Part shown: positions 25,201-62,293 of the stretch, in pieces | Numbering within the stretch: position 1 is the first letter of the stretch | How the letters are laid out: every line of letters starts with the position of its first letter | Source: Macrostomum lignano | Lineage: Eukaryota | DNA: 64,000 bases | Direction of reading: 5' to 3' | Assembly: GCA_002269645.1 (NCBI GenBank) | Contig: NIVC01002619.1 | Coordinates: forward strand, 7,580 to 71,579 | Translations under genes and position numbers: made by a program | Notes under the pieces: model-generated | Told to the model about the DNA's origin: nothing | What the model saw: the letters and a program-made list of their open reading frames with translations, nothing else | Database searches by the model: none

Positions 25201-26358
25201 CTCTACCGATGGGTTAGTAGACTCTACCGATAGGTTAGTAGACTCTACCGATGGGTTAGTAGAATCCACCGATGGGTTAGTAGACTCTACCGATGGGTTA
25301 GTAGACTCTACCGATGCGTTAGTAGAATCCACCGATGGGTTAGTAGACTCTACCGATGGCTTAGTAAAATCTTTTAATTGGGCTAGCAGAATATACCGCG
25401 ATAGGGTAGTCACAATATACTAAATCTTCTAATCTACTAAACTCGTAATATTTGTTTGAATTTAAGAAGTGTTAGTTTACTAGTGTACTAATCTGACATC
25501 GAACCCACTACTCGTATCAAAGTCAACAAAGCAGCCTTGCAATCTGTCGATACAATACTCCAAGCTTATCTATTTCTAAGTAATCGCCATTCTACTCTCG
25601 CAGGCTAAAAGCCAGTTCAAGCGACGCAGCACGGCAAACAATGTGGACATCATCATTCCTGTGCCTGCCGATGTTGACTCGCCAAAGTTTAAGGTTGGCT
25701 TTTGGTTTTCTACTTAACAGTAGTTTGTTAAAGTTTATAAGTATTTAGAAAAGCATTTCGAAATGTCTACAGAATCATTAATATGCTTCTTGTTTTTGAT
25801 TTATAGATGCAAATCCAAGAAGCAAATAAAGATAAAGTTGAATACGAAATTAAAGGAAATTAAGGTGTTTTGGATTCCAAATCTAATGAACAAATGAAGG
25901 TTAATTAGATGCAAATCTAGGAAGCAAAAGGTCAAGTTCAATACGAAACTAAGGAACAAATGAAGGTTAATTGAATTCAAGTCTAAGGAAGAAAAATAAA
26001 GTCAAGTTGAAAACGAAAAGGGACAAATGAAGGTCAAGTCGAACATGTGAGACAATGAACAAATGGACGTAATTCAACCATCCCCGCAGACTACGGTGGG
26101 CAGCTGCCGCTACCAGCCCGAGAGCAGCTCTCTGGTGTGGAGCATCAAAGCATTCCCTGGCGGCAAGGAGTTCATTATGAGGGCGCATTTTGGACTGCCT
26201 ACGGTTGACACCGATGAGAGCAATGGGAAGCCGCCGATTGCCGTGAAATTCGAGATCCCATATTTTACTGTGTCTGGCATTCAGGTAAGATATTTTTCAC
26301 TGATGTGTGCTATATGTAAGGCAGACAGACAGACAGACAGACAGACAAGCAGGCAGAA

Positions 26359-34805: not shown

Positions 34806-34888
34806 ATGCACTCATAACTCATCAACACTCATCTCCGGTGTGTTCTCCAAACTTCATGCCACTAATCAATCCAAGCGCATACAACAGC

Positions 34889-43672: not shown

Positions 43673-43981
43673 CACTCTACATGTAAATATGAAGTTAGGC
43701 ACAAGCGACCATTCTTTGGTGGGGTTATGCGATTCAGATATAATCAGGAATATCCTTGTGTTCGCCATTGTGTGTCTAAAATAACGGCAAGAGACATATT
43801 GCTGGTCTATTTTAACGGCTCGTATTCACTTGAAAGTTACGAAAAGGACGTTGGTTGGTTCAAAACTTACCTGAATCTACGTATTCTAGGAATTATAATT
43901 AAAGCCAGAATGAAGCTGTGTCAGCTGCAGAACCTAAAATTCTAGTTCCGGCTGTTACAACAACGCAACCAACAACGCGCA

Positions 43982-45907
43982 ATGACTTGTTCTCCATGTC
44001 ATGTCAATGGCGATGAGTATTGCACATTGATGCTTACCAGCAACGGAAGTATAGGGTTGGATCCTGGTGAAGCTATACTATTTTTGTCAAATATTGTTAC
44101 GGATAATATTCTCATATCATTTGGACCTACTCCCGTGCGAACCTCCTTCCTTCAACATTCTTGTTTCAGTGAGTTCTCAGCCGATCTATGGTGAGATTGA
44201 AAATATTCTAGTTTCACCTCCACCACAACCTCACCTCCACCTAAACCACAACCTCGACCACAACCTCAGCCTCAACCACCAACTGCACAACCACATTGGC
44301 AAGCATATCCAAAGCGTAACGTCTGTAAAGGTTTCTGCAACTGCTTCAAAAGCAGAAATTGCGCCTGGTCTTTGGTTGCATTTCTTCTTCATTTGCTGTT
44401 GGCCTGTTGTCTGACATTGACCGTAGTGCTTTTTGGCCCGCTGCGGCTGTTAAAGGATAATGGACTGGTGAGCTGACACTGAAAATGGTAAAAGAAAGGT
44501 ATTTTAGGCGAAAGAAAATATATTTTCAGCTAAAAATTCTGCAAATTCTAGATAATAAATTCTGAGATTCTTGGCAGAAAATTCTGTAGATTCTGGGCAG
44601 AAAATTCGGCAGCTTCTAGGCAGAAAATTTGGCAGCTTCTGGGCAGAAAATTCTGTAGATTCTGGGCAGAAAATTTGGCAGATTCTATGCAGAAAATTCG
44701 GCAGATTCTGGGCAGAAAATTTGGCAGCTTCTGGGCAGAAAATTCGGCAGATTCTGGGCAGAAGTACTGCAGATTCTGGGCAGAAAATTTGGCAGATTCT
44801 GGGCAGAAAATTTGGCAGATTCTATGCAGAAAATTCGGCAGATTCTGGGCAGAAAATTTGGCAGATTCTGGGCAGAAGTACTGCAGATTCTGGGCAGAAA
44901 ATTTGGCAGATTCTGGGCAGAAAATTCGGCAGCTTCTAGGCAGAAAATTTGGCAGCTTCTGGGCAGAAGTACTGCAGATTCTGGGCAGAAAATTCGGCAG
45001 ATTCTGGGCAGAAAATTCGGCAGATTCTGGGCAGAAAATTCGGCAGATTCTGGGCAGAAAATTCGGCAGCTTCTGGGCAGAAAATTTGTCAGATTCTGGG
45101 CAGAAAATTCTGTAGATTCTGGGCAGAAGTACTGCAGATTCTGGGCAGAAAATTTGGCAGATTCTGGGCAGAAGTACTGCAGATTCTGGGCAGAAAATTT
45201 GGCAGATTCTGGGCAGAAGTACTGCAGATTCTGGGCAGAAAATTTGGCAGATTCTGGGCAGAAAATTCGGCAGCTTCTGGGCAGAAAATTTGGCAGATTC
45301 TGGGCAGAAAATTTGGCAGATTCTGGGCAGAAAATTCGGCAGATTCTGGGCAGAAAATTCGGCAGATTCTGGGCAGAAAATTCGGCAGATTCTGGGCAGA
45401 AAATTCGGCAGATTCTGGGCAGAAAATTCGGCAGATTCTGGGCAGAAAATCGGCAGCTTCTGGGCAGAAAATTCTGTAGATTCTGGGCAGAAAATTTGGC
45501 AGATTCTGGGCAGAAAATTCGGCAGATTCTGGGCAGAAGTACTGCAGATTCTGGAAAGAAAATTCGGCAGATTCTTGGTATAAAATTTAAGTAGTTTCAA
45601 AGCAGAAACTTCGGCAGATTCATTGCAATGAGGGGGATAGACTTGGGATTGAGAATTGAAAATTCAGGAAAGAGAGGAAGAAAGATTCATGGGGGAGGGG
45701 CAAAAATGAAGGTAATTATGGACAGACATAGCAGACCAACGCTAATTATGTGCTGTTCCTGATTCATCAGCTAATTACCTACGTGCCTACGTGTATTCAG
45801 TAACTATAGAAAACTCCTCCCACACCAACATGGCACAGGTACGAGTATCACAAGAGTGGATCAACTTGTCGTCGAAATTCGAGTCTACAACCCCATGGTT
45901 CGTGACT
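43982..45907 (+). pseudogene. Truncated pseudogenic duplicate (copy A) of the TNF-like ligand gene at 48546-51086; only exons 1-3 retained
   Basis: Exon-like blocks 43982-44066, 44170-44467 and 45810-45907 are clearly paralogous to copy B exons 1-3 (the TM-coding stretch is nearly identical). Lesions: -1 frameshift near 44232, +1/-1 shifts in exon 3, and TGG>TGA in the PHGSW motif. Homology to B intron 3 continues to about 48045, then stops before the TNF-domain exons. Confidence 0.8.
44555..45625. repeat. 22-bp minisatellite GGCAGAAAATTYGGCAGATTCTG-type (intron 2 of copy A)
   Basis: About 48 copies; same family as 49315-49620. Confidence 0.95.
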
Positions 45908-46283
45908 GTAAGTTCATTTGCTAGACAAATGAAATGCTTACATGTACTCGAAATTAACGTCTATATTAGGATATTTTCTTGGCCTGAAGCCGAACTTCCA
46001 TATTTTCTGGCGTACATTTATTTATAGCCAGCTAGTTATTTTTGCGAGATGTTTTTTTTTGAAAGACGATTCTACGAGCGTAATTGTTGTAAACATGAAA
46101 CCGTGGCTCTCTGCCTGCGTACGCGATGTGGTTCCTAATTATTAATCTAGAATATACACATGCACATAAATCTATATTTAGTCATTTGTTTCATACTGTT
46201 TATAACACACTTACTTAATTAAAGTGCGAAGGTAGAGAGTGGAAGTAGAGGAAATTGAGGTAGAGGGCGGGGTAGAGGGGCGG

Positions 46284-47454
46284 TGTTAGGCTTTCTGTTC
46301 TCCGGGGTCTTAATTTATCCGGGGGACACTGCAAAGCAAAATTATTGTCGCTTTGCGATAACCTACCCTGGATAATCCAAGGCACAACAAAATCGGGCTT
46401 TGAAATATCCTGGGTCTTAAATTGTCCGGGGTGAATAAAGATTGGTGGTCAAGTTATTTACCTGATAAAGCGCATGTGAATGGGGCAGGACATCATTTCG
46501 AGAGAATGGGGCTGACTCAGAGGCCAGGGAAGGGCCCTGACTGCACCTTAGACAGGGGAGGGGCAGATGAGGTGCAGTCTAAGAATAAATCGATAATGGA
46601 CTGGCGTCACATTGCTAGCACTACAAGCGTACGTGCAATGAAGATGAGTGTACGAGCTAATAGCACACAAGGGAAAGTGTTGCGCAAATTACGAGTATAT
46701 TACACGTAACTTTTAAGATATACAGAGTTTATTTCTTGTCGAAGTTCTAAGTTCAGGAAAATTTATCTCTCGATGGCTAAAGTATCGCTGAACCAAGTGT
46801 TCTTTATGTTTTGAACGAGTATGTTGAGCTTCCGGAAAATTCCAGTACGAAAGAGAGAGATAATCTAAAAAGAAAAATGAGAGAAAAGAGCAAAAACTTC
46901 ACGCTTCATTCAGCGGATGGCCTGTTTTTGATTGATCGAATTACATGTATGAATAGATTGGTGAATCAAGTAACAGTTTTTCGGCTGACAATGTATAGTA
47001 TCAATAGCTTTAATTTTGCTTCTGTTTGGAGTGTGAAATGCAAGATAGTGATTGAAAATACACTCGGTTAAATAAGCATGACGCAGATGTTTGCCAATTG
47101 AAAAAGTAGCAAAAATGTTTTCTTACTTTGCCTTTCCTAACCCCGGATATCAGTAGCCGGATGTCCTAAAGCAAACCTCTGTCTCCGCAGACTGACCCCT
47201 CTCTTTCAACCTACAGTCGGATGTCCTACGACAACTTCCCCTTCTTGTGATCTCCGGGCCGGATAGCAGAGTCAGTGCCGTAGGATGTCCGGGAGAGACA
47301 TCTCAAAGTGCCCGGACAATGCAAAGCAGCTCAAGATATCCGGTTAGGAGAAAACAAAGCAGGCTTTTTGCTTGGCAGTATCCGGGCGGATATCGTAAGT
47401 GCGTTCGGATATCCGGGCCAGACAAAAAAACCCCGGAAAGTCTAAACTGTAACA
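46284..47454 (+). mobile_element. Non-autonomous Ginger-like (Gypsy-integrase-related) DNA transposon
   Basis: Termini TGTTA...TAACA, exact 4-bp TSD GCGG (46280-46283 and 47455-47458), and imperfect TIR sharing TCCGGGGT. It interrupts sequence that is continuous in paralog B. Internal frame 46811-47071 (YVELPENSSTKERDNLKRKMREKSKNFTL..DGLFLIDR..NRLV) resembles the GIN1/Ginger integrase N-terminus. Confidence 0.7.
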
Positions 47455-47714
47455 GCGGAGATAGAGAGGGTACATGCAGAGGGCGGGGGTAGAGGCGGAT
47501 ATAGAGGTTAGAGATGGAGGGCTGGAGGTAGCTTGTAGTAGGTGTGGGGCAGTGTACATCTGCCTCCATCTCTCCCTCTAATTTCCCCTCTCTGTCTCGC
47601 TCACTTGGTCCGGCGTTATAACTGCACCGTACAACAGCAAAAACAACAAAAGCAACAAAGACAACAACAAAAAACAACAAAAACAGCAACAACAACAGCA
47701 ACAACAGCAACTGG

Positions 47715-47952
47715 TTACGGTCGAGGCGCTGCAGCTCCGCTGTGTGGCCTCCCGGGTCACAGGCGTCATGAACCGCGTGCTCGTCGGCGCTCCTGCGCCC
47801 ACCACCGAGTGGACCGTCGCGCACATCGTGCCGATCCCGAAGAAGGCATTGACAACGCGGAAAGAAGACCACCGCGGGATCTCGCTGATGTCCTGCACCC
47901 CGAAGCTCTTCAACCGGCTTCTGCTCGATCGTCTGCAGTCGGTGCTGGACCG
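47715..47952 (+). mobile_element. Non-LTR retrotransposon (RTE-like) reverse transcriptase fragment
   Basis: EWTVAHIVPIPKK..DHRGISLMSCTPKLFNRLLLDRL is the typical RT domain 0/1 motif. GC-rich, truncated on both sides, and preceded by an (AAC)n-rich tract at 47630-47712. Confidence 0.85.
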
Positions 47953-48074
47953 GAGATAGAGGGGTTAAAAGTGTAAGGGCCGAGGTAGACATAATGAAGG
48001 TATAAAACCGAGAAGTCTAATTGCACTCTGTAAAACATGAAGCGTGGCACACACCCTCAATTACCCCAGCTAAT

Positions 48075-48226
48075 GCTGGCACCCATTTTACAGCTGGGTG
48101 AACTGAAGCAATGCAAGAGTTAAGTGTCTTGCTCAAGAATACAAGTTGTTCTAGTGCGATCGGAAATCGAACCCCCAACCATCAAGTCGTGAGTCCGATG
48201 CTCTCACCACTAGGCTACAAACCCTC
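48075..48226 (-). mobile_element. tRNA-derived CORE-SINE-like element
   Basis: The minus strand has an A box (TAGCCTAGTGG) and a B box (GGTTCGATTTCC). Adjacent plus-strand cccattttacagctgggtgaactgaagc..ttaagtgtcttgctcaag resembles the MIR/CORE domain. Confidence 0.7.
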
Positions 48227-48545
48227 ACTCAAAATGAGATCACGCAAGTGTAACTAATGATTTTATATTATCATACTCGAAATTCTATTAATTCTTTTTG
48301 AAATTGAAACCACCTGGTGCCTAAAATAGCGGCTAGAAAGCCTATTTTTATTCCATTTTTATCTGTAGAAGTTTAAGAAAAGAATGTCACTCTGGAAAGT
48401 TACTTGGATAAGCTACCTGAGCCAATTAAATTTATTTATTCTATGAAATATAACTGGAGCCAGAATTAACTGCGCTTACAAAGCTAATGCTAAGCTGCCG
48501 GACTAATAGGAACACCTGGACTCTACTTCTGCTGTTTCACTCGCA

Positions 48546-51086
48546 ATGGCTTGTTCTCAATGTCGTGTCAGTAGCGGTCATGCTTATTGCACATTGGTGC
48601 CTACAATTGACGGCATTATGATGGTGGATCCTGGTATGAAACCAGTTATTATTGCATAAAACTATATTCTCATACCGTTACGAACTACATGTAGATAACT
48701 CCCGTCCGAACCTCTTTCAACTCTCCCGCTACAGAGACTTCGGAGCCGCAATATGTAGAGATTGAAAAAATTACTCCAGCTTCACCTCCGCCGCGACCGC
48801 CGAGACACGGAAAAACGTCACCTCCGCAACCTCCACCACAACCTCCACCTAAACCTAGACCACAACCTCCACCTAAACCTATACCACAACCTCCACCTAA
48901 ACCTAAACCACAACCTCCACCTAAGCCACAACCTCGACCACAACCTCGACCACAACCTCAACCACAACCTCAACCACAACCTCGACCACAACCTCAACCA
49001 CAACCTCGACCACAACCTCAACCACAACCTCGACCACAACCTCAACCACAACCTCGACCACAACTTCCACCACCTACTGCACAACCACATTGGCAAGCAT
49101 ATCCAAAGCGTAACGTCTGTAAAGGTTTCTGCAACTGCTTCAAAAGCAGAAATTGCGCCTGGTCTTTGGTTGCATTTTTTCTTCATTTGCTGTTGGCCTG
49201 TTGTCTGACATTGACCGTAGTGCTTTTTGGCCCGCTGCGGCTGTTAAAGGATGATGGACTGGTGAGCTGACACTGAAAATGGTAAAAGAATGGGATTTTA
49301 GGCGAAAGAAATGAGATTCTGAGCTGAAAATTCTGCAGATTCTAGATAATAAATTCTGAGATTCGGGGCAGAAAATTCTGTAGATTCTTGGCAGAAAGTT
49401 CTGTAGATTCTTGGCAGAAAATTCTGTAGATTCTGGGCAGAAAACTCTGTAGATTCTTGGCAGAAAGTTCTGTAGATTCTGGGCAGAAAATTCTGTAGAT
49501 TCTGGGCAGAAAATTCTGTTAGACTCAAGGCAGAAAATTCTGTAGATTCTGGGCAGAAAATTCTGTAGCTTCTAGGCAGAAAATTCTGCAAAATTTACTA
49601 CGATTTAGTCTACGGCAGATTCATAGTAATGAAGGGATAGATTCGTCATGGAAAATTGAAAAATTCAGGGAAGAATGAAAGGAATATTTAGTGGACGAAA
49701 ATTAGGATAATTATATAGACAGACGAAGTTAACTAAAGCTAATCATGTGTTGTTCCTGATTCATTAGTTAGCTAACTATTCAGTAGAAAACTCCCCCACA
49801 CCAACACGGCGCAGGTACGAGTATCACAAGAGTGGATCAACTTGTCGTCGAATTTCGAGTCTCCAAGCCTCACGGGTCTTGGCTGTAAGTCCATTTGCCG
49901 GGCATATGAATTGCTTACTCAGCAATTACGTCTATAGTATACAATTATTTTCTTGGCCTGAACTTCCATATTTTCTGGCGTACATTTAGCCAGCAAATTG
50001 TTTAACAAAACTGGTCTTTCGTCAACCGTCAATGTTTGACATAAACACATGAAGCCGCTACTTTGCCAGCGTGCGCGATGTGGTTTTTAACTGTTAGTCT
50101 GAATTATACCCGTGCACAAAAATTATATTTAGTCATTCAATTCACTGTTTATAGCACACTTACTTGAAGTGCGAAGGTAGAGGAGTGAAGATAGAGGGTG
50201 AAGGTAGATGTAGAAGGCGGGGTAGAGGACAGAGGTATAGAGGGGCGAAGATAGAGAGGGTGTAGTTAGAAGGGCGGAAGTAAAGGGCGGAGGTAGAGAG
50301 CGGAGATGGAGGGGGCGGAGATAGTGGGGGTGGATGTTGAGGTAGAGGCCGGAGGTAGATGGGGCGGAGATAGTGGGGGTGTAGTTAGAAGGGTGAAGGT
50401 AGAGGGCGGAGGTAGAGTGTGGACTTACGAGCGTAGAGGGGCGGAGGTAGATATAATGAAGGTATAAAATATGAGATGCCCAATTGCACTTTGCAAAACA
50501 CGAAGCCCGACAGCCGGGAACTACAAGCAACTTTTTCAACTGAAGCCAAACTATTTCAGTACAAACTCGCTGCTAAGCCAAACAAAGATTGATTGCTCAC
50601 CTGCCAATGCCCCAACTTCAGCCGTGAACTTCGCCGCAATCGACCCGTCTATTAAGATGGTCAAGATTGAAGAGGACGAAAACGGCCAAAGAAGCAAAAT
50701 ACTCATCAAACAGGGTGGTCTGTTCCGCATCAATTTCAATGTGAGTAGAAGCTCAACCTCACTGAAAGTAGCAGATCTTATTTGATTCTTATCTGATTTA
50801 TATTTAGTCATTAATTAAAAAGACCTTATATTTCCAGGTAAATTTTGATTGCAAGAACGGCGTAACTACTGTTCAATCGAGAGTTCAATATTCGACGCCG
50901 AAGCATCAGGAGTCCCAAAAACTGCACGAGTGCATGCGAAAATGGATTGGTCAGTCAAGCCGCGATTTAATTGTGTGCAGTTTCAGCATAGTTCGTCCAC
51001 TAACGGTCAATAGTTGGCTGCAGTTGCAGTTTTCTAGATATAACTGCAAAAATAACTTTACTGTAAGCTTGGAGAGAATGGTTTAA
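48546..51086 (+). CDS. Putative TNF-superfamily-like type II membrane ligand (copy B) with Pro-rich cytoplasmic domain, 5 exons, 380 aa
   Basis: Exons: 48546-48633, 48735-49261, 49787-49884, 50560-50740, 50838-51086. GT-AG junctions, phases 1/0/2/0, 1143-nt open frame. Architecture: MACSQC..YC N-terminus, YVEI, about 100-aa PQPPPKP/PQPR tract, CKGFCNCFKSRNC, TM helix AWSLVAFFLHLLLACCLTLTVVLFGPL, then a beta-rich domain with ILIKQGGLFRINFN|VNF (TNF/C1q-like xxGxYxxxxxVxF strand) ending FTVSLERMV*. The TNF assignment rests on motif pattern and an intron position shared with gene C. Confidence 0.7.
49315..49620. repeat. 22-bp minisatellite (intron 2 of TNF-like copy B)
   Basis: About 13 copies of GCAGAAAATTCTGTAGATTCTG-type units. 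Confidence 0.93.
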
Positions 51087-51754
51087 CAAATTTTTGCATT
51101 CGTGAATTGTGCCATATAAGCCTTAAAGAGAAATAGATTTACAGCCAGAGTCCCAGTCAGCCAGCCCACTTATCTGCCCACTTATCACTGACTCTTTTTA
51201 AATTCTAAAGACTTCCTCAGCCCCGTCTTGCCCCACCCCTCCACTAGAGCGTCTCCTTCCTACCCCCACCGTACATTCATTTAATAGCTGCGTACAAACC
51301 CGCCCCTCCTTTTAAAGCGCCCACCCCAATTTTCTCGTCCTCTCGTCTTTATACCACTTCAAATTCTAAAGATTTTCTCACCCCTGCTTGCTCACCTCCT
51401 CACTAGAGCGTCGCCTTCCTACCCCTCACTGTACATTCATCCAATGGCTGTGTACAAATCCACCCTCCCCTTAAAGCCCCCCACTAATCTCCTCATCAAA
51501 TTAGCTATTTAACTCAATTTGTATTTCATCAGTGTACATTTTTCTCCAGTGAGTGTACTGCTTAAAAATCGTTAATTGTCGACAGTTACTTATGCTTTAG
51601 ATATCAACTAGCAATCTTCGCCCCCCGATGGGGGACATCTGGATAGAATCTCTGTTTTCTACAAGTAACAAAAAGACAGCCAAAAATCCTTCAAAAAGAC
51701 AACAGACAAACTGCTCAAATGAAGTGCATTGCAAAAAGAAATCATCCCAAGACT

Positions 51755-52835
51755 GCAAGCATCCCCCAGATAGCAAGCATCCCCAGATAGCAAGCATCCC
51801 CAGATAGCAAGCATCCCCCAGATTGCAAGCATCCCCCAGATAGCAAGCATCCCCCAGATAGCAAGCATCCCCCAGATAGCAAGCATCCACCCAGATAGCA
51901 AGCATCCCCCAGATAGCAAGCATCCCCCAGATAGCAAGCATCCCCCAGATAGCAAGCATCCCCCAGATAGCAAGCATCCCCCAGATAGCAAGCATCCCCA
52001 AGATAGCAAGCATCCCCCAGATAGCAAGCATCCCCCAGATAGCAAGCATCCCCCAGATAGCAAGCATCCCCCAGATAGCAAGCATCCCCAAGATAGCAAG
52101 CATCCCCCAGATTGCAAGCATCCCCAAGATAGCAAGCATCCCCCAGATAGCAAGCATCCCCCAGATAGCAAGCATCCCCAGATAGCAAGCATCCCCCAGA
52201 TAGCAAGCATCCCCCAGATAGCAAGCATCCCCAGATAGCAAGCATCCCCCAGATAGCAAGCATCCCCCAGATAGCAAGCATCCCCAAGATAGCAAGCATC
52301 CCCCAGATAGCAAGCATCCCCAAGATAGCAAGCATCCCCAAGATAGCAAGCATCCCCAAGATAGCAAGCATCCCCCAGATAGCAAGCATCCCCAAGATAG
52401 CAAGCATCCCCCAGATTGCAAGCACCCCCAGATAGCAAGCATTCCTCAGATAGCAAGCATCCCCCAGATAGCAAGCATCCCCAGATAGCAAGCATCCCCA
52501 AGATAGCAAGCATCCCCCAGATAGCAAGCATCCCCCAGATAGCAAGCATCCCCCAGATAGCAAGCATCCCAAGATAGCAAGCATCCCCAAGATAGCAAGC
52601 ATCCCCAAGATAGCAAGCATCCCCCAGATTGCAAGCATCCCCCAGATTGCAAGCATCCCCCAGATAGCAAGCATCCCCAAGATAGCAAGCATCCCTCAGA
52701 TAGCAAGCATCCCCCAGATAGCAAGCATCCCCAGATAGCAAGCATCCCCCAGATAGCAAGCATCCCCCAGATAGCAAGCATCCCCAAGATAGCAAGCATC
52801 CCCAAGATAGATAGCATCCCCAAATAGCAAGCATC
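51755..52835. repeat. 17-18-bp minisatellite GATAGCAAGCATCCCCCA
   Basis: About 60 copies. Confidence 0.97.
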
Positions 52836-52954
52836 CACCAGACAATAAGTAGCTAGTGCGACAATTTCCTTAGCATTATAGCGGCTCCTTTAAAATTCGC
52901 TTACTTTTACGTTTGAAATTGTGTATCTTTTATGTTTAACAGGGTGGCTCTTTT

Positions 52955-55158
52955 ATGTTCTACGCTCGTACATGGTAACTCTTTTATGTTTGATACGGTG
53001 GCTTTTCAATGTCTGACATAGTGGCTCTTCTATGTTTGACATGGGGGCTCTTCTATGTTTGACATGGGGGCTCTTCTATGTTTGACATGGGGGCTCTTCT
53101 ATGTTTGACATGGGGGCTCTTCTATGTTTGACAAAGTGGCTTTTTAATGTTTGACATGGTGGCTCTATTATGTTTGACATGGTGGCTCTTTAATGTTCGA
53201 AATGGTGGCTCTTTAATGTTCAAAAAGGTGGCTCTTTTATGTTTGACATGGTGGCTCTTTAATGTTTGACATGGTGGCTCTTTAATGTTTGACATGGTGG
53301 CTCTTTAATGTTAGACAAAGTAGCTCTTTAATGTTTGACATGATGGCTCTTCAATGATAGACATGGTGGCTCTTTAATTTTTGACATGGTGGCTCTTTAA
53401 TGTTGGACATGGTGGCTCTTTAATGTTAGACATGGTGGCTCTTTAATGTTCGACATAAAGTCACTTATATGTTTGACATGATGGCTCTTTTATGTTTAAC
53501 ATGGTGGCTCTTTAATGTTTGACATGGTAGCTCTTTAAAGTTCGACATGGTGGCTCTTTAATGTTCGACATGGTGGCTCTTTACTGTTCGACATGGTGGC
53601 TCTTTTATGTTAGACATGGTGTTGCTTCAATGTTTGACATGGAGTTACGTATATGTTTTACATGGTGGCTCTTTTATGTTCGACGTGGTGGCTCTTTAAT
53701 GTTTGACATGGGGTCTCTTCAATGTTTGACATGGAGTTACGTATATGTTTGACATGGTGGCTCTTTAATGTTTTACATGGTGGCACTTTCATGTTTGACC
53801 TGGTGGCTCTTAAATGTTTGACATGGTGGCTCTTGATTGTTCGACATAGAGTCATGTATATGTTTGCCATGGTGGCTCTTTAATGTTAGACCTGGTGGCT
53901 CTTTTATGTTTTGCATGGTGGCTCTTTTATGTTCGACATGGTGTCTCTTCAATGTTTGACATGGAGTCATGTATATGTTTGACATGGTGGCTCTTGTATT
54001 TTTAACACGTTGGCTCTTTAATGTTCGACATGGTGGCTCTTTAATGTCTAACATGGAGTCACGTATATGTTTGACATGGAGTCATGTATATGTCTGATAT
54101 GGTAGCTCTTTAATGTTTTACATGGAGTTACCTATATGTTTCACATGGTGGCTATTTTATGTTTGACATCATGGTGGTTCTTAAATGTTCGACATGGTGG
54201 CTCTTTAATGTTTTACATGGTGGCTCTTTAATATTTGACATGGTGGCCCTTTTATGTTCTACACGGTGGCTCTTTAATGTTTGACATGGAGTCATGTATA
54301 TGTTTGACCTGGTGGCTCTTTAATGTTTGACATGGTGGCTCTTTAATGTTTTATATGGTGGCACTTTTATGTTTGACCTGGTGGCTCTTTAATGTTTGAC
54401 ATGGTGGCTTTTTAATATTTGACATGGTGGCACTTTCATGTTTGACCTGGTGGGTCTTTAATGTTTGACATGGTACCTCTTTTATGTTCGACATGGTGGC
54501 TCTTTAATGTTTTACATGGTGGCTCTTTAATGTTTGACATGGTGACTCTTTTATGTTCTACATGGTGGCTCTTTTATGTTCGACATGGTGGCTCTTTAAT
54601 GTTTGATAAGGTGGCTCTTTAATGTTTAAAATGGTGGCTCTTTAATTTTCGAAATGGTGGCTGTTTTATGTTTGACATGGTGGCTCTTTAATGTTCGACA
54701 TGGTGGCTCTTTAATGTTCTTAATGGTGTCTGTTTTATGTTTGACATGGCGGCTCTTTAATGTTTGACATGGTAACTCTTTTAGGTTTGAAATGGTGTCT
54801 CTTTAATGTTTGACATGGTGGCTTTTTAATGTTTGACATGGTGGCTTTTTATTGTTCGACATGGTGGCTCTTTTAGGTTTGAAATGGTGGCTCTTTAATG
54901 TTTGACATTGTGGCTCTTTAATGTTCGACATGGTGGCTCTTTAATGTTTGACATGGTAACTCTTTTATGTTTGATATGGTGGCTCTTTTATGTTCGACAT
55001 GGTGGCTCTTTAATGTTCGACATGGTGGCTCTTTTAGGTTTGAAATGGTGGCTCTTTAATGTTTGACATTGTGGCTCTTTAATGTTTGAAATGGTGGCTC
55101 TTTAATGTTTGACATTGTGGCTCTTTAATGTTTGAAATGGTGGCTCTTTAATGTTTAG
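52955..55158. repeat. 23-24-bp minisatellite TTTAATGTTTGACATGGTGGCTC
   Basis: About 95 moderately diverged copies. Confidence 0.96.
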
Positions 55159-55519
55159 AATTTTGTGTTTTTAAGGTGTTTTAATAAAAAAAACATTTTT
55201 CACTACTAAGATTCGAACCAAGGTCGCTACATTAGCATTCCAGTCTGTTTGCATCCAGCTATCTCTTTTCAATTGGAGAACTTGAATTGTGGCCCTATAA
55301 TAAATTCTTATAGCAAGTCAGTTAGAGTAAAAAGTTATGACATAATCAATTTCTCAGTCAGCCAGTATCAGTCTGAATTCAAGTTAGCAATATGGTTACG
55401 CAATTTCAATGAAGTCTTGTGTGCGTTTCTGTGGCACTGTTTTCAACTTGTTGTGATGCAATCTTTATCACAATCGTAATTCAGCCAGTCAGTTTTTTCT
55501 CTAGCATTCTTACAATTCA

Positions 55520-55740
55520 TTTCAAGTCAAAAATTTGGCTTGACCTTTGCAAAAAAGCATGTTTTTCGAATATTTAATCCCTTTAACATTGAGCAATTTC
55601 TTAGCCAAGATGCATGTACCGTCCCAGGAAAATTTCTGATCGAATGGTGCAAGTTTGAAGAAAATCGGTTGAGCCATTTTTTCTGAAATCTATCGCATAG
55701 CTAGTTAGTTACAGACATTTCATTTTTAGTATATAGGAAG
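55520..55740 (+). mobile_element. Possible Helitron/Helentron-derived non-autonomous element end
   Basis: gcaagtttgaagaaaatcggttgagccatttt...gttacagaca...ttttagtatatag resembles DINE-1/HINE-type 3' ends (pattern recall only). Confidence 0.3.
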
Positions 55741-56078
55741 TGCTTATCAATTAACACTTTATAGTTAACATTAACAATGTCCATGTCCTACCCGTTTTGC
55801 CTGCTGAGTTTTATTGACCATGCTTGTATATAACAGGCGCTTGTATTTTTCATCATGCAGGTATTCGTGAAATGAACTCAGTTCAGAGCGCGTTAAATTC
55901 CTAAATATCATTTTGTGCTTAATTTTTGCAGTAAAATATTTTTGTACACACAATTGGCTTTCATTCATGTTTTGAGCTACTTTGAGTAGGTTAATTCTGT
56001 TTACCGCTAAAATCATCTGAATACATCTAAATACATTTTGTAACTGCTTGTTGTTGTTTAAATTTATTTTTTCTCAAG

Positions 56079-56562
56079 GCGTTTGTTACCTTATCATTAT
56101 CTCAATGGCGCAATTGTGTCATGGAAAAGTACAATTATAGAATCATTATCATGAATCTTGTAGCAGCAGCCAAAACACGTGATCCAATGGTTACTAAGCA
56201 AGTATTGCATTGGAGTGAATCATCCAAACCCGATAGCCCAAAAGCAGCGCATAGTTTACATTCGAAAGATTTGAAAATACAGTGTGGCATCGAAACGGAG
56301 TTATAAAAACCGAAAATAGCTTCTTTAAATACTTGGTAAGCTTTTTGGCATCCTTGGCAGTAGTTTCTTATCTAGCCCAACAGATCAAAGCAAACGTTGG
56401 CAGCAAGACTTTGCAAATTGGCAACACAGTTTTATTAGTATACGGTGGTTTTGCTTGGTTGAATCAAAAGAGAAGGTCAATAGTCCATTTTTCAACTTCA
56501 TTGAACCTAACGATGTACTAATATGTAACGGAAGTCTAGCCTTTAAAGTCAACAATTTTTAA
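56079..56562 (+). pseudogene. Frameshifted single-exon TNF-homology-domain-like sequence (copy D)
   Basis: Strong acceptor ttttttctcaag at 56078. Restoring two single-base deletions (near 56280 and in the T run near 56490) gives about 160 aa: IIMNLVA..QVLHWSES..NGVIKTENSFFKYLVSF..LLVYGGFAWLNQKRRSIVHF..CNGSLAFKV*. This follows the TNF order (strand A, LxW, GxYxxY, GGxxxL, FGAF-like end). Upstream exons were not resolved. Confidence 0.45.
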
Positions 56563-56771
56563 ACATTTATTTTCCTTTTCTTACTACTGGCTTGAGTAGA
56601 CAGTTCAGAGTGCAAAAATACAGCTATTTTTATTAACAGACAGCCAATCAGAATTGAAGCCATCTTTAATATAAATATTGCATCTTTACACGGATTTATC
56701 TTAGCAAAGATTTTAGTAACTGCTGCAGTCCTACAATTACATTGAGCCTCACATGCGCTGACTTAACTACA

Positions 56772-59700
56772 ATGGCTAATAATACAGTAAAGTTCAGCAA
56801 AGAGCAGGACAATGTATACTTCACCATAGTATCGCTGACCGGTGAACAGCCGCAGCCGTCACCGCAGCTGCCTGCCCCAGGTACCAGCAATGAACTTCCG
56901 CCTTCAATTCTCTTGTCGTCATCGCCAATTCCAGAAGCCTCTACGTCACATGGCCGCCGGTTCGAGCAGAATCGACAGGCAAAAACTCGGATGACCTCAA
57001 GTAGAGGTTCGCAGAGGTCTTCGTCGTTCTTTGCCAGACGGCAGAAGCAGCAACACCAGGAGCAGCAGCAGATGAAACAGCAGTCTAGTCTGCGCCAGCA
57101 GGATAAACGAGGTGCCCGGACTCCTTCGTCGAGACAATCGTCGGGAACTCGAAGGTCTGGAAGGTCTCGAAGCAGTGCTCGAAATTCGCAGGAGCGTCGC
57201 CAGCTGTCAATCATCAATACCACATCCTTCATCGTGTTCATGGCCAACCTACTGGCAACCATGGCTGTCCTGGCCATGTTCTCGTCTGACTTCGCTGCCC
57301 TGACTGCTGCAGGCGGGAGCCCAGCGATGAAGCTGAAAGTGAACAGGTATTTAGTCTGATTTGTTTTGGGGAGGGAGCTAGGGAGAGACAGGCGTTGCGA
57401 GGAAGAGAGGGGAGAGGAGAGGAAGAGTGGGAGAGAGGGAGAGTGGGAGAGAGGGAGAGTAGGAGAGAGGGAGAGTGGGAGAGAGGGAGAGTGGGAGAGA
57501 GGGAGAGTGGGAGAGAGGGAGAGTGGGAGAGAGGGAGAGTGGGAGAGAGGGAGAGTGGGAGAGAGGGAGAGTGGGAGAGAGGGAGAGTGGGAGAGAGGGA
57601 GAGTGGGAGAGAGGGAGAGTGGGAGAGAGGGAGAGTGGGAGAGAGGGAGAGTGGGGGAAAGGGAGGATGGGGGAAAGGAAGAGTGGGGGAGAAAGAGAGT
57701 AGGGGAGAGGGGAGAGGAGAGAGGGGGAGAGGAAGAGAGGGGTAGAGGAAGAGAGGGGTAGAGGAAGAGAGGGGTAGAGGAAGAGAGGGGTAGAGGAAGA
57801 GAGGGGTAGAGGAAGAGAGGGGTAGAGGAAGAGAGGGGTAGAGGAAGAGAGGGGTAGAGGAAGAGAGGGGGAGAGGAAGAGAGGGGTAGAGGAGGAGAGG
57901 GGGAGAGGAAGAGAGGGGTAGAGGAAGAGAGGGGAGAGGAGGAGAGGAGAAGAGGAAGAGAGGGGGAGAGGAGAGGGGGAGAGGGAGAGAGGGGGGAGAG
58001 GAGAGGGGGAGAGAGAGAGGGAGAGAGGGGGAGAGGACAGAGAAGGAGAGAGAGGGAGGGGGAGAAGACAGAGAAGGAGAGAGAGGGAGGGGGAGAAGAC
58101 AGAGAAGGAGAGAGAAGGAGAGAGGGGGAGAGGACAGAAAAGGAGAGAGAGAGGGAGAGAGGGGGAGAGGACAGAGAAGGAGAGAGAGAGGGAGAGAGGG
58201 GGAGAGGACAGAGAAGGAGAGAGAGGGAGAGAAGGGGAGAGGACAGAGAAGTGAGCATGCAGTTGTCAATCAGAATGGAATGCCGCACCCGCAGGCTTGG
58301 CTCAGTCTGTCAATCGGCAGAAGCCGGATCTGTCAGACAAGCGAGGACACAGAATGTCACCGCCAAGATCAAAGCACCTATTTTTCGGGGGGTGAGCATG
58401 GTTGCATGTACATATGAATAGTTTTTATGCCCTAAAATCAATTCATAGTCATATTTCAAGTCTATTGACTTGGGCGTATTCTAACGATTTGAACTTATTT
58501 TGTCATTTCTTTTTAAGCGAAGTTGAAAATCTTGTTAGCAAGTTCAGCTTCAGAAAATCTGGTGTGCAAAATTCAAGAAATTTTTAAGTAAATTGCTGCA
58601 CTGATTGCAATCTGTCTTTGACCAGAATTTTAGTAGAGAAATCAAATGCTTTGCTGGTGTTTAAGGCCAGGCCATATCAATGCTTTCTAGAGGGACAGTA
58701 GTGTGCACAAGAGTGCCTATAATGTAGGGTGTGACAAGATCGCCTATACCGTATAGGGTGTGACAAGAGTGCCTATATTGTATGGGGTGTGACAAGAGTG
58801 CCTAATGAAGAGTGACGAGGTTCACTACATATTGCTTTTCTGCACATCATGAGAACAGTTGCAACCAAACAAAGATCTCCAACTCATCCGCAATCGCATA
58901 GTGAACTCAATCGGCCCCCTGACGTGCAGCGACTGGTCTAAGCACTCTGCCAACTGTGAAAACGGCATCCGTGGTCCTCTGTACAAACTGATTGGCAACT
59001 CCAACCGGATCCAGGTTGCTAGGGATGGCTACTACAGGATATACATGATGGTGAGATGAGATGGACTGCCCTACAGCCTCGGACATACATGTACACCTCA
59101 CTCCACCATGCACCCACCTCACTCCACTATACACCCACCTCACTCCACTATACACCCATCTCACTCCGCTATACACCCACCTCACTCCACTATACACCCA
59201 CCCACTCCACTATACACCCACCTCACTCCTCTATACACCCATCTCACTCCGCTATACACCCAACCCACTCCACCGTGCACCCACCTCACTCCACTATGCA
59301 CTCAACCCACTCCACCGTGCACCCACCTCACTCCACCGTGCACCCACCTCACTCCACCTTGCACCCACCTCACTCCACCGTGCACCCACCTCACTCCACC
59401 GTGCACCCACCTCACTCCACCTTGCACCCACCTCACTCCACCGTGCACCCACCTCACTCCACCGTGCACCCACCTCACTCCACCGTGCACCCACCTCACT
59501 CCACTATACACCCACCCACTCCACTATACACCCACCCACTCCACTATACACCCACCACTCCACCATGCACCCACCTCACCCGCTATACACCCTTCCTCCT
59601 CTAAACCTAAAAGTACTTCAGGCTACTTACTACCATATAAAAGTTCAATTTTATACCCCGATATCAACACGTCTCACATATGGCAGGTATCCTCTTGTTG

Positions 59701-59944
59701 GAAGGGTCAAGAGGAGCAACTGGCCATCCGGGTGAATAATAAAGTGTGGGCCGCTTGCTATCCCAGAAACATTTCCAAATCAAGCGACAGCAATAAATAC
59801 ACCCGTTGCTACGTCAACTCTGTTCGCTACTTGCGAGCGAAATATGACGCGGTGGATTTCAAATGCTCCAGCAGTTCGTCAACCTGCTGCCTGAACTCCT
59901 TCGACCGGATGACTCATTTCGGACTGGAGAGACTCGGAAATTGA
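56772..59944 (+). CDS. TNF-superfamily ligand-like type II membrane protein (gene C; Eiger/EDA-like fold), 4 exons, about 380 aa
   Basis: Exons: 56772-57346, 58274 (or 58295)-58391, 58859-59050, 59687-59944; open frame. Long Ser/Arg/Gln-rich N-terminus, TM IINTTSFIVFMANLLATMAVLAMF, stalk with RTRR, then a TNF-domain pattern: SDWSK, RIQVARDGYYRIYMM|V, TRCYVNSVRYL, terminal THFGLERL. Confidence 0.78.
57405..58250. repeat. Polypurine GA-rich repeats (gene C intron 1)
   Basis: Blocks of GGGAGAGTGGGAGAGA, GGTAGAGGAAGAGAGG and GGACAGAGAAGGAGAG units. Confidence 0.93.
59095..59590. repeat. 21-bp minisatellite CCACCTCACTCCACCGTGCAC (gene C intron 3)
   Basis: About 23 copies. Confidence 0.92.
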
Positions 59945-62190: not shown

Positions 62191-62293
62191 GTGTGTTGCG
62201 TACACTGCTTTGATTTTTGTCGGATAAACCTGCATGCCAATGCGCATCACAGATGGAATATTAAGTTATTATTAAAGAGCGCTTTTAGATTCT

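What the first reader, a model, noticed from the sequence alone, without database searches (positions are those of the whole stretch)
43982..59944. Hidden tandem cluster of four divergent TNF-superfamily-like ligand loci
Seen: four same-strand loci in 16 kb (pseudogene A, intact B, frameshifted D, intact C). B and C are type II membrane proteins with a C-terminal beta domain. They share a phase-0 intron at the same motif position (GGLFRINFN|V and DGYYRIYMM|V), similar-sized last exons (249 and 258 nt) and similar ends (FTVSLERM and THFGLERL). Established: TNF ligands are type II proteins with a C-terminal THD carrying a GxYxxYxQV strand. Inference: a lineage-specific, rapidly diverging, birth-and-death TNF ligand array in an invertebrate, mostly missed by ORF calling because the exons are short and buried in satellites.
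Basis: partly seen in the sequence, partly recalled or inferred. Interest (0 to 1): 0.85.

Follow-up and report, generated by a model that had tools for sequence, protein, structure and literature searches.

The report
Divergent EDA-like TNF ligand gene pair
This stretch of an animal genome holds one convincing but very divergent TNF-family (ectodysplasin-like) signalling-ligand gene, a weaker second copy and a broken partial duplicate. That makes it an ordinary local gene-family expansion, not a cluster of four.

Summary
The described exons exist. Locus C (56772-59944, +) is a four-exon GT-AG gene for a 373-aa type II membrane protein. Its C-terminal domain is homologous to the TNF homology domain (THD), closest to ectodysplasin-A (EDA):
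- BLASTP E=3e-6 over 139 aa.
- Smith-Waterman z=10.8, with 0 of 2000 shuffles reaching the score.
- All five invariant seed residues and the EDA Cys332/Cys346 pair are present.
- The last intron lies at the EDA-A2 splice position, same phase.

Locus B (48546-51086, +) has the same architecture and the same intron position. Its THD signal is weak: 2-5 of 1000 shuffles reach it against TNF profiles, and 0 of 1000 once C is added. It lacks three of the five invariant residues.

Locus A is a frameshifted tandem copy of B's two 5' exons only. Locus D has no support.

Pfam PF00229 does not detect B or C. No homologue appeared in the large protein libraries, but a neighbouring gene's tail found nothing either, so this organism's clade seems absent from them.

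Verdict: a real feature, partly as interpreted. It is one solid and one probable TNF-superfamily ligand gene plus a partial duplicate. Tandem TNFSF expansions in invertebrates are already known, so interest is modest.

The parts
56772..57346 (+). Locus C exon 1. Encodes Met1 to residue ~192: a Ser/Arg/Gln-rich cytoplasmic tail, the membrane anchor (SFIVFMANLLATMAVLAMF) and the start of the stalk. Donor CAG|GTATTT, phase 2.
   Evidence: The ATG-to-stop ORF is 195 aa (stop-to-stop about 230 codons) in non-repetitive sequence. Hydropathy and basic N-flank.
58295..58391 (+). Locus C exon 2 (97 nt, stalk; contains RQAR, a minimal furin-type RxxR). Inferred only.
   Evidence: It is the path found by hand that joins the strong exon 1 donor to exon 3 in frame through canonical sites (cacccgcag|G ... 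GGG|GTGAGC); intermediate exons were not enumerated. Skipping it requires weak donors. Homology does not cover it.
58859..59050 (+). Locus C exon 3 (192 nt). N-terminal half of the TNF homology domain: the conserved Trp (SDW) and the C strand DGYYRIYMM. Donor ATG|GTGAGA, phase 0.
   Evidence: It is the top-scoring of 1704 six-frame ORF segments of the window against a TNF HMM. tblastn with EDA and BAFF hits it. BLASTP to EDA.
59687..59944 (+). Locus C exon 4 (258 nt with stop). C-terminal half of the domain: Cys24/Cys41 of the exon align with EDA Cys332/Cys346, followed by CYVNSVRYL and THFGLERLGN*.
   Evidence: The BLASTP alignment to EDA continues in register from exon 3. MAFFT alignment. 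Exon length compares with 252 nt for the last coding exon of EDA (c.925 onward; literature and own count).
48546..48633 (+). Locus B exon 1 (MACSQCRVSSGHAYCTLVPTIDGIMMVDP; Cys-rich N-terminus). Donor CTG|GTATGA, phase 1.
   Evidence: The copy in A is at 43982-44066.
48735..49261 (+). Locus B exon 2. Contains a YVEI motif, a long Pro/Gln-rich repeat (12-nt coding repeat 48827-49073), a juxtamembrane Cys cluster and the membrane anchor. Donor CTG|GTGAGC, phase 0.
   Evidence: The membrane-anchor part is 172/174 nt identical to the A copy, against 84/93 in the adjacent intron.
50546..50740 (+). Locus B exon 3 (195 nt; the acceptor is uncertain). Putative N-terminal half of the domain, ending KILIKQGGLFRINFN. 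Donor AAT|GTGAGT, phase 0.
   Evidence: tblastn with BAFF gives E=0.2 window-wide. Rank 5 of 1704 ORF segments with the BAFF/APRIL/EDA/C HMM.
50838..51086 (+). Locus B exon 4 (249 nt with stop). Putative C-terminal half, with four Cys at positions comparable to C and ending FTVSLERMV*.
   Evidence: Rank 3 of 1704 ORF segments, first after C's own exons. The HMM alignment places both Cys on the E/F-strand Cys columns.
43982..44467 (+). Locus A. A tandem copy of B exons 1-2 only (exon 1-like 43982-44066, exon 2-like 44170-44467). It is frameshifted inside the Pro/Gln repeat, so the reading frame stops at 44412-44414 before the membrane anchor.
43975..48043 (+). Duplication unit A. 43975-46278 is homologous to B unit 48539-50228, and 47977-48043 to 50439-50506. 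46278-47977 is extra sequence, which I read as a retroelement fragment (unverified). Homology ends about 40 nt before B exon 3.
   Evidence: Self-blastn. Pfam found no reverse-transcriptase hit for 47582-47956.
56121..56560 (+). The presumed locus D: three short ORFs in different frames with one hydrophobic stretch, immediately upstream of C's start codon. Not supported as a TNF-like locus; more likely C's 5' flank.
46011..46130 (+). A possible decayed TNF-domain relic in unit A (RTFIYSQLVIFARCFFLKDDSTSVIVVNMKPWLSAC). Its counterpart in B intron 2 (49910-50002) is more decayed. Unproven.
   Evidence: tblastn with EDA: 37% identity over 38 aa, E=0.07 window-wide and 0.003 region-only. Rank 4 of 1704 ORF segments.

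Best explanation
Locus C is a gene for a membrane-anchored TNF-superfamily ligand of the ectodysplasin/Eiger-like kind. The protein has an N-terminal cytoplasmic tail, a single type II membrane anchor, a short stalk and a C-terminal TNF homology domain of about 150 aa.

By inference from the family, the domain folds as a jelly-roll beta sandwich and assembles into homotrimers through the conserved aromatic core (GYYRIY, CY..V..L, FG..L). It would be stabilised by an E-F strand disulfide like EDA Cys332-Cys346. It would signal by clustering a cysteine-rich TNF receptor on another cell, either membrane-bound or after cleavage in the stalk (RQAR).

Locus B, 5.7 kb upstream on the same strand, is most likely a strongly derived paralogue. 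It has the same gene architecture, but its cytoplasmic tail is proline-rich and it has lost several core residues.

Locus A is a recent tandem duplicate of B's first two exons. A frameshift in a coding repeat has inactivated it.

Shown here: the exon structure, the topology features, homology of C to EDA and the TNF family, the shared intron position, and the A/B duplication. Inferred: expression, splicing of C exon 2 and B exon 3, trimerisation, the receptor and its function.
For: C, sequence similarity:
- BLASTP to rat EDA (P0107): E=3e-6 for the single comparison, 24% identity over 139 aa, running in register across the exon 3/4 junction.
- Smith-Waterman score 77 against shuffles of 27.7+/-4.6. 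None of 2000 shuffles reached it; Gumbel P about 5e-7, or about 4e-6 after correcting for 8 seed families.
- hhalign against an 8-family TNF profile: P=1.9e-4 over 95 columns, and 0 of 300 shuffles.
- hmmsearch: 10.8 bits, 0 of 1000 shuffles. It stays above all shuffles with EDA left out of the profile: 7.8 bits, 0 of 1000.
- In an unbiased six-frame scan of the whole window, C exon 3 ranks first of 1704 segments.

C, conserved features:
- MAFFT aligned C unaided to 18 TNF ligands, with Val/Gly/Tyr/Leu/Phe-Gly columns invariant. The conserved Trp is present, and the two Cys fall on EDA's Cys332 and Cys346 (numbering by my own count).
- The last intron of C (phase 0, YRIYMM|V) aligns with EDA Ser305-Gln306|Val. 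That is the EDA-A2 donor, two codons upstream of the EDA-A1 donor at c.924, codon 308 (PMC5015951 for c.924+2; PMC9918506 for Val307-Glu308).
- AlphaFold2 with a TNF alignment gives a beta sandwich: core pLDDT 60-86, mean 59. Its best Foldseek match is EDA-A2 (1rj8, TM 0.64). This is circular support only.

B:
- Same topology, same phase-0 intron position, and exon sizes of 195/249 nt against 192/258 nt.
- TNF HMM 4.9 bits (5 of 1000 shuffles reach it). BAFF/APRIL/EDA HMM 7.2 bits (2 of 1000). With C added, 16.4 bits (0 of 1000) over 99 profile positions, with both Cys on the E/F Cys columns.
- Shuffled-C controls gave mean 6.5 and maximum 13.8 bits.
- B's two domain exons rank 3rd and 5th of 1704 ORF segments.

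A.
Against: - Pfam PF00229 and PF00386 gave no hit for B or C, even at E<=10. phmmer against PDB sequences did not list any TNF ligand.
- No homologue was found in 5.8 billion clusters or 1.84 billion representatives. There is therefore no conservation or covariation evidence and no deep alignment.
- Single-sequence AlphaFold2 failed (pLDDT 33). The alignment-based model is biased by its TNF rows, and its first 50 residues are unmodelled.
- B is not significantly similar to any single TNF ligand after multiple-test correction (best is BAFF, z=3.4), nor to C directly. It lacks the conserved Trp, the second Tyr of GxYxxY and the Gly of the FG motif.
- There is no expression evidence. C exon 2 and the B exon 3 acceptor are unverified.
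Confidence: 0.75

Rival explanations
1. Only C is a TNF-family gene. B is a real but unrelated lineage-specific type II membrane protein with a small Cys-containing beta-rich ectodomain. Its resemblance to the TNF C strand and its intron position would then be coincidence.
For: - B against C directly is not significant.
- B against EDA gives no alignment.
- hhalign covers only 18-31 columns around the C strand, with P 0.003-0.016.
- B lacks 3 of the 5 residues invariant in the seeds.
- One shuffled-C control already reached 13.8 bits.
Against: - B scores above 998-1000 of 1000 shuffles against three different TNF profiles, and the alignment with C in the profile spans 99 positions, including both Cys columns.
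- Both B domain exons rank in the top five of 1704 ORF segments.
- Intron phase and position are identical to C and EDA, the last exon is of almost equal length, and B lies on the same strand 5.7 kb from a bona fide family member.
Confidence: 0.15
2. B and/or C are not functional genes. They would be decaying pseudogenes or chance ORFs among satellites, and the spliced models would be artefacts of choosing compatible GT/AG sites.
For: - No expression data and no homologues.
- Exact-match look-ups found nothing.
- The region is full of satellites, which create long spurious ORFs.
- One neighbouring copy (A) is demonstrably broken.
Against: - C has an uninterrupted 1122-nt spliced ORF with four canonical splice junction sets, and a 195-aa (ATG-to-stop) first-exon ORF in non-repetitive DNA.
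- The alignment to EDA continues in frame and in register across the proposed junction, which chance splicing would not give.
- The membrane-anchor part of B exon 2 is 98.9% identical to A, against 90% in the flanking intron. That argues for constraint or conversion on coding sequence.
Confidence: 0.08
3. The domains belong to the C1q side of the C1q/TNF superfamily rather than to TNF ligands.
For: The two families share the jelly-roll fold, and weak profile signals could cross over. BclA and other C1q-like folds appear low in the Foldseek list.
Against: - No PF00386 hit.
- No signal peptide and no collagen repeat; both proteins are type II membrane proteins.
- The best and only significant match is EDA, including its disulfide pair and its intron position.
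- C1q profiles themselves were not tested here.
Confidence: 0.02

Closest known systems
Ectodysplasin-A (EDA, TNF superfamily; structures 1RJ7/1RJ8)
   Same: - Type II membrane ligand with a C-terminal THD.
- 24-27% identity to C over about 110-140 aa.
- The same Trp, GxYxIY, CY..V..L and FG..L signatures.
- The E/F-strand Cys pair (EDA Cys332/Cys346).
- A phase-0 intron at the EDA-A2 donor position and a last coding exon of about 250 nt.
- A possible basic cleavage site in the stalk.
   Different: [quoted passage not shown]
- Its cytoplasmic tail is much longer (about 150 aa) and rich in Ser/Arg/Gln.
- It has four to five extra Cys.
- Identity is far below that among vertebrate EDAs, so orthology is not shown.
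- The receptor is unknown.
Eiger, the arthropod TNF ligand (structure 6ZT0; PMC6684607)
   Same: An invertebrate type II TNF ligand that is, by my recollection of the original description, itself closest to EDA. It appears among the Foldseek matches of the C model (TM 0.64).
   Different: Only 11% identity in the structural alignment. No direct sequence test was run against Eiger. Eiger is a single-copy gene in arthropods (PMC6684607), whereas this locus carries two or more copies.
BAFF/APRIL (TNFSF13B/TNFSF13)
   Same: The E-F disulfide subgroup. The best single-ligand matches for B are local, for example KILVKETGYFFIYGQV against KILIKQGGLFRINFNV.
   Different: Similarity is not significant after correction. 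B lacks the conserved Tyr and the FG Gly.
Lineage-specific tandem TNFSF expansions in non-vertebrates (at least 24 genes in Branchiostoma floridae, 23 in Crassostrea gigas, up to 14 in tunicates; PMC12843592)
   Same: Same-strand neighbouring TNF-like genes, evidence of recent tandem duplication and gene decay, and very divergent members.
   Different: Here only two complete genes are visible in 16 kb, and the duplication that can be demonstrated covers only 5' exons. The organism is not identified.
Fas ligand cytoplasmic tail (analogy only)
   Same: B has a long proline-rich cytoplasmic segment next to the membrane anchor. FasL has the same arrangement (my own knowledge, not tested).
   Different: In B it is a Pro-Gln-Pro-x repeat encoded by a 12-nt tandem repeat whose length differs between A and B. 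There is no sequence homology.

Membership tests
TNF ligand superfamily (THD, Pfam PF00229) - locus C | Type II membrane topology: no signal peptide, one internal anchor, domain at the C-terminus. | tested here: met
   Single hydrophobic 19-mer at residues 152-170 (mean KD 2.14), basic N-flank, hydrophilic N-terminus. No dedicated topology predictor was available.
TNF ligand superfamily (THD, Pfam PF00229) - locus C | Match to the curated family profile PF00229 above threshold. | tested here: not met
   hmmscan listed no TNF or C1q hit, even at E<=10.
TNF ligand superfamily (THD, Pfam PF00229) - locus C | Statistically significant sequence similarity to bona fide THDs over most of the domain. 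| tested here: met
   EDA by BLASTP, E=3e-6 over 139 aa. Smith-Waterman z=10.8, 0 of 2000 shuffles. TNF profiles without EDA still exceed all 1000 shuffles. hhalign P=1.9e-4.
TNF ligand superfamily (THD, Pfam PF00229) - locus C | Signature residues: Trp of strand A', Gly and Tyr of GxYxxY (strand C), Leu of strand F, Phe-Gly of strand H, C-terminus just after strand H. | tested here: met
   All are present and aligned by MAFFT and BLASTP.
TNF ligand superfamily (THD, Pfam PF00229) - locus C | Jelly-roll beta-sandwich fold. | tested here: inconclusive
   Single-sequence AF2 gave pLDDT 33. With a TNF alignment the mean was pLDDT 59, and the best Foldseek match was EDA-A2 at TM 0.64, but that alignment biases the model.
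TNF ligand superfamily (THD, Pfam PF00229) - locus C | Homotrimer formation and binding to a cysteine-rich TNF receptor. | not testable with these tools
   Needs multimer prediction with a deep alignment, or biochemistry.
EDA-like subgroup - locus C | Shared gene structure: phase-0 intron directly after the C-strand motif, and a last coding exon of about 250 nt. | tested here: met
   C's intron at YRIYMM|V aligns with EDA Gln306|Val, the EDA-A2 donor. The EDA intron position comes from c.924+2 (PMC5015951) and Val307-Glu308 (PMC9918506).
EDA-like subgroup - locus C | [quoted passage not shown] | tested here: not met
   The model has no Gly-X-Y repeat. There is only a minimal RQAR motif in the unverified exon 2.
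TNF ligand superfamily - locus B | Type II topology with a C-terminal domain. | tested here: met
   Hydrophobic 19-mer at residues 174-192 (mean KD 2.57), a basic and Cys-rich N-flank, and a 147-aa C-terminal ectodomain.
TNF ligand superfamily - locus B | Significant similarity to THD profiles. | tested here: inconclusive
   - No Pfam hit.
- 4.9-7.2 bits against TNF HMMs, reached by 2-5 of 1000 shuffles.
- 16.4 bits with C in the profile, 0 of 1000 shuffles, while shuffled-C controls reach up to 13.8 bits.
- hhalign P 0.003-0.016.
TNF ligand superfamily - locus B | Signature residues (Trp, GxYxxY, Leu, Phe-Gly). | tested here: not met
   Only the Gly and the Leu are kept. Trp is absent, Tyr is replaced by Asn, and the Gly of FG by Ser.
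TNF ligand superfamily - loci A and D | Presence of any THD-coding sequence. | tested here: not met
   A contains only copies of B exons 1-2. D gives no TNF-HMM signal and no Pfam hit. The one weak EDA-like ORF in unit A (46011-46130) is not significant window-wide.
C1q family (PF00386) | Signal peptide, collagen stalk, gC1q profile match. | tested here: not met
   No PF00386 hit. The models have no signal peptide and no collagen repeat.

The most novel reading that the evidence does not exclude
B would be a working ligand of a strongly remodelled TNF-domain subtype that has lost the canonical trimer-core Tyr and Gly. The locus would be actively making new ligands by reshuffling 5' (cytoplasmic/anchor) exon modules onto THD exons. 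The A/B partial duplication and a possible decayed THD relic inside B's intron 2 and unit A would be traces of that process. Such genes, invisible to Pfam and to ORF callers, would mean TNF repertoires in poorly annotated invertebrates are systematically undercounted.
Probability: 0.25. Interest if true: 0.5.

Novelty: new member of a known kind. Interest (0 to 1): 0.33.

Why it matters
If confirmed, C adds a very divergent EDA/Eiger-like ligand whose last intron matches the vertebrate EDA-A2 splice site. That would be a useful marker for tracing the ancestry of the EDA branch of the TNF superfamily. It would also give a concrete example of a family member that standard profile annotation (Pfam with HMMER) misses.

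B and A illustrate tandem duplication, rapid divergence and decay within the family. That process is already documented for amphioxus, oysters and tunicates (PMC12843592). The finding therefore refines a known picture and does not open a new one.

Tried and rejected
- **Pfam hmmscan** of full-length and domain-only B and C: no TNF or C1q hit. Only noise appeared, such as Cohesin at E=0.024 for B.
- **phmmer against PDB sequences:** only chance hits.
- **Large protein libraries:** the 5.8-billion-cluster search with the C ectodomain found nothing. The exhaustive phmmer over 1.84 billion representatives found nothing. A chimeric query of the B ectodomain plus the C-terminal tail of the neighbouring CHMP7-like gene also found nothing. 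The last result suggests that the organism and its close relatives are missing from the library, so 'orphan' status means little.
- **Exact-protein look-ups** of window ORFs: not on record.
- **Single-sequence AlphaFold2 of C:** pLDDT 33, and its Foldseek search was meaningless.
- **Direct B-versus-C comparison:** BLASTP and global/local alignment against shuffles were not significant.
- **Seed-profile search of the library:** it returned only mammalian RANKL, BAFF, TNF and EDA, which added little diversity.
- **Locus D:** searched for in 51.1-56.8 kb. No profile, Pfam or paralogue signal was found.
- **A relic domain in unit A (46011-46130):** only one weak HSP, and no ordered downstream pieces. 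Left open.
- **C1q membership:** rejected on architecture and the lack of a profile hit. A dedicated C1q profile was not built.

Full report
**Context.** The window is eukaryotic. It holds multi-exon genes whose introns are packed with minisatellites; Tandem Repeats Finder reports 50 rows. The neighbours are:
- a TTC39-like gene on the minus strand (Pfam Iml2-TPR_39, E=4e-32 and 5e-25);
- an AP-complex mu-subunit gene;
- a CHMP7-like gene with Snf7 exons.

The finding lies directly downstream of the CHMP7-like gene. I could not identify the organism.

Locus C assembles from four exons, all with GT-AG boundaries, into an uninterrupted 1122-nt ORF of 373 aa: 56772-57346, 58295-58391, 58859-59050 and 59687-59944. 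Exon 1 lies in an ORF of 195 aa (ATG to stop) in non-repetitive DNA. Exon 2 is inferred. It links the strong donor CAG|GTATTT in frame to exon 3; skipping it needs weak donors.

Locus B assembles from 48546-48633, 48735-49261, 50546-50740 and 50838-51086 into 1059 nt, or 352 aa. The acceptor of its exon 3 is the least certain site.

So are the phase-0 introns at YRIYMM|V and FRINFN|V. Each protein has one strongly hydrophobic segment preceded by a basic flank, and neither has a hydrophobic N-terminus. That fits a type II orientation.

**Loci A and D.** Self-comparison shows that 43975-46278 is a tandem copy of 48539-50228 at 75-89% identity, with a last short match just upstream of B exon 3. 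A therefore contains copies of B exons 1 and 2 only. tblastn finds no counterpart of B's domain exons.

Spliced like B, A's reading frame runs into a stop at 44412-44414. The membrane anchor lies in another frame, so there is a frameshift inside the Pro/Gln coding repeat. The anchor-coding part is 172/174 nt identical between A and B, while the adjacent intron is 84/93. This points to constraint or gene conversion on that exon.

For D, I found only three short ORFs in different frames at 56121-56560, just upstream of C's start codon. They have no Pfam hit, no TNF-profile signal and no similarity to the other loci. The rest of the B-C interval is two satellites. The 'four loci' are therefore two complete genes, one broken partial duplicate and one unsupported item.

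**Is C a TNF-family ligand?** Standard annotation says no. Targeted tests say yes.

Negative results:
- Pfam gave no TNF or C1q hit.
- PDB sequence search gave nothing.
- Two very large protein searches gave nothing.
- Single-sequence AlphaFold2 failed at pLDDT 33.

I aligned eight human TNF homology domains written from memory. A library search confirmed them as genuine, with 100% hits to human TNF and matches to RANKL, BAFF and EDA, all carrying PF00229.

Positive results against those seeds:
- hhalign of that profile against C gave P=1.9e-4 over 95 columns, from strand C to the C-terminus. None of 300 shuffles reached the score.
- hmmsearch gave 10.8 bits, and none of 1000 shuffles reached it.
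- In an unbiased scan of all 1704 six-frame ORF segments of the window, C exon 3 ranked first.
- MAFFT aligned C unaided to 18 TNF ligands at 27% identity to EDA. It placed the Trp, GxYxIY, CY..V..L and FG..L signatures in the family columns.
- BLASTP of C against rat EDA gave E=3e-6 over 139 aa, running in register across the exon 3/4 junction.
- The Smith-Waterman score was 77 against 27.7+/-4.6 for shuffles, with 0 of 2000 reaching it and Gumbel P about 5e-7.
- Leaving EDA out of the profile still left C above all 1000 shuffles.

These statistics hold for a targeted test of eight families. They would not survive a database-wide correction, which explains the negative large searches.

**Independent support from gene structure.** In the BLASTP alignment, C's last intron falls between residues aligned with EDA Gln306 and Val307, in phase 0. 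EDA-A1 and EDA-A2 differ by Val307-Glu308 through alternative splicing (PMC9918506). The 5' splice site of that EDA intron is at c.924+, which is after codon 308 (PMC5015951, citing the bovine c.924+2 variant). So the EDA-A2 donor lies after Gln306, exactly C's intron position, and the EDA-A1 donor lies two codons downstream.

By my count of the EDA sequence, its last coding exon encodes 83 residues, against 85 in C and 82 in B. Cys24 of that exon is shared by EDA (Cys332) and C. The partner Cys follows 14 residues later in EDA and 17 in C.

With the TNF alignment, AlphaFold2 models the core of C as a beta sandwich: pLDDT 60-86 over residues 51-161, mean 59. Its best Foldseek match is EDA-A2 (1rj8, TM 0.64). 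I treat this as consistency only, because the alignment rows impose the fold.

**Is B one too?** The evidence is weaker but points the same way.

Against:
- B shows no significant similarity to C in pairwise tests and none to EDA.
- hhalign matches only the strand C region, with P 0.003-0.016.
- B lacks the conserved Trp, the second Tyr of the strand C motif and the Gly of FG.

For:
- 4.9 bits against the 8-family HMM, reached by 5 of 1000 shuffles.
- 7.2 bits against a BAFF/APRIL/EDA HMM, reached by 2 of 1000.
- 16.4 bits once C is added to that profile, reached by 0 of 1000. The alignment then spans 99 profile positions and puts both of B's central Cys on the E- and F-strand Cys columns.
- Controls with shuffled C in the profile gave mean 6.5 and maximum 13.8 bits. 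The reciprocal test (C against profile plus B) rose from 9.9 to 17.5 bits, against controls of 9.7+/-3.4.
- With that profile, B's two domain exons rank 3rd and 5th of 1704 ORF segments, directly after C's own exons.
- B has the identical intron phase and position, near-identical exon sizes and type II topology, and it lies on the same strand 5.7 kb from C.

Taken together, I put about 0.6 on B being a derived TNF-domain paralogue.

**Mechanism.**
- *Shown:* gene architecture, topology features, homology of C to the EDA/TNF domain, the shared intron, and the A/B duplication with A's frameshift.
- *Inferred from the family:* the domain trimerises through the aromatic core and is stabilised by the E-F disulfide. 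It engages a cysteine-rich TNF receptor, either on the membrane or after stalk cleavage. An RQAR motif lies in the unverified exon 2. Downstream signalling would go through TRAF adaptors to NF-kB or JNK, as for EDA and Eiger.
- *B's cytoplasmic tail:* it carries a YVEI motif, a long Pro/Gln repeat encoded by a 12-nt tandem repeat, and a juxtamembrane Cys cluster. This suggests regulated trafficking or reverse signalling, but that is speculation.

**Comparison and novelty.** C works like EDA or Eiger and passes most sequence-level membership tests. It fails the curated Pfam threshold, and it lacks EDA's collagen repeats, so orthology to EDA is not shown.

Tandem, fast-evolving TNFSF expansions outside vertebrates are already documented. 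PMC12843592 reports at least 24 genes in Branchiostoma floridae, 23 in Crassostrea gigas and up to 14 in tunicates, mostly by tandem duplication. C is therefore a new member of a known kind.

The most interesting residue is threefold:
- how far C and especially B have diverged;
- the conserved EDA-A2-type intron;
- a possible decayed domain relic in unit A (46011-46130), which I could not establish.

**Limits.**
- There are no transcripts and no orthologues, and the organism is unidentified.
- The protein libraries probably lack this clade, because the CHMP7-like tail also found nothing.
- The EDA residue numbering rests partly on my own count of the sequence.

Noticed in passing
window 46011-46130 (+), counterpart 49910-50002: An ORF in duplication unit A reads RTFIYSQLVIFARCFFLKDDSTSVIVVNMKPWLSAC, 37% identical to EDA strands C-E including the E-strand Cys, and has no intron at the EDA position. 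The homologous stretch in B's intron 2 is more decayed. It could be a relic TNF domain that predates the A/B duplication, or it could be chance (E=0.07 window-wide).
   Followed up: partly
window 48827-49073 and 44216-44290: The Pro/Gln-rich cytoplasmic segment of B is encoded by a 12-nt tandem repeat (about 21 copies). The A copy is about 240 nt shorter and out of frame. A coding minisatellite therefore changes tail length and caused the frameshift. An assembly error in the repeat is not excluded.
   Followed up: partly
window 46278-47977: Extra sequence in unit A that is absent from unit B. One frame (47744-47959) reads ...IPKKALTTRKEDHRGISLMSCTPKLFNRLLLDRL, which looks to me like the start of a non-LTR retrotransposon reverse transcriptase. 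Pfam gave no RVT hit at E<=0.01.
   Followed up: partly
window 34838-40688 (+): A CHMP7-like gene (ESCRT-II-like N-terminal exon and Snf7 exons) lies immediately upstream of the TNF-like loci. From memory, human CHMP7 sits next to the TNFRSF10 (TRAIL receptor) cluster. This may be coincidence and was not tested.
   Followed up: no
window 22295-26300 (+) and 3720-8443 (-): AP-complex mu-subunit exons: the first 131 aa are in a single exon, and a C-terminal exon lies at 26063. On the opposite strand is a TTC39-like gene (Iml2-TPR_39, E down to 4e-32).
   Followed up: partly
whole window: Almost every intron and intergenic stretch carries a different minisatellite (units of 11-62 bp, arrays of 0.3-4.4 kb; 50 TRF rows). 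These produce many long spurious ORFs on both strands.
   Followed up: no
window 62290-64000: A GC-rich (57%) segment with long overlapping ORFs on both strands and an Ala/Ser-rich frame. It may be the CpG-rich first exon or promoter of another gene. Not examined.
   Followed up: no
window 50826-50837: The intron sequence just upstream of B's last exon translates in frame as LYFQ|V, which mimics the IYSQV motif. This slightly inflates the ORF-level HMM score of that exon.
   Followed up: yes
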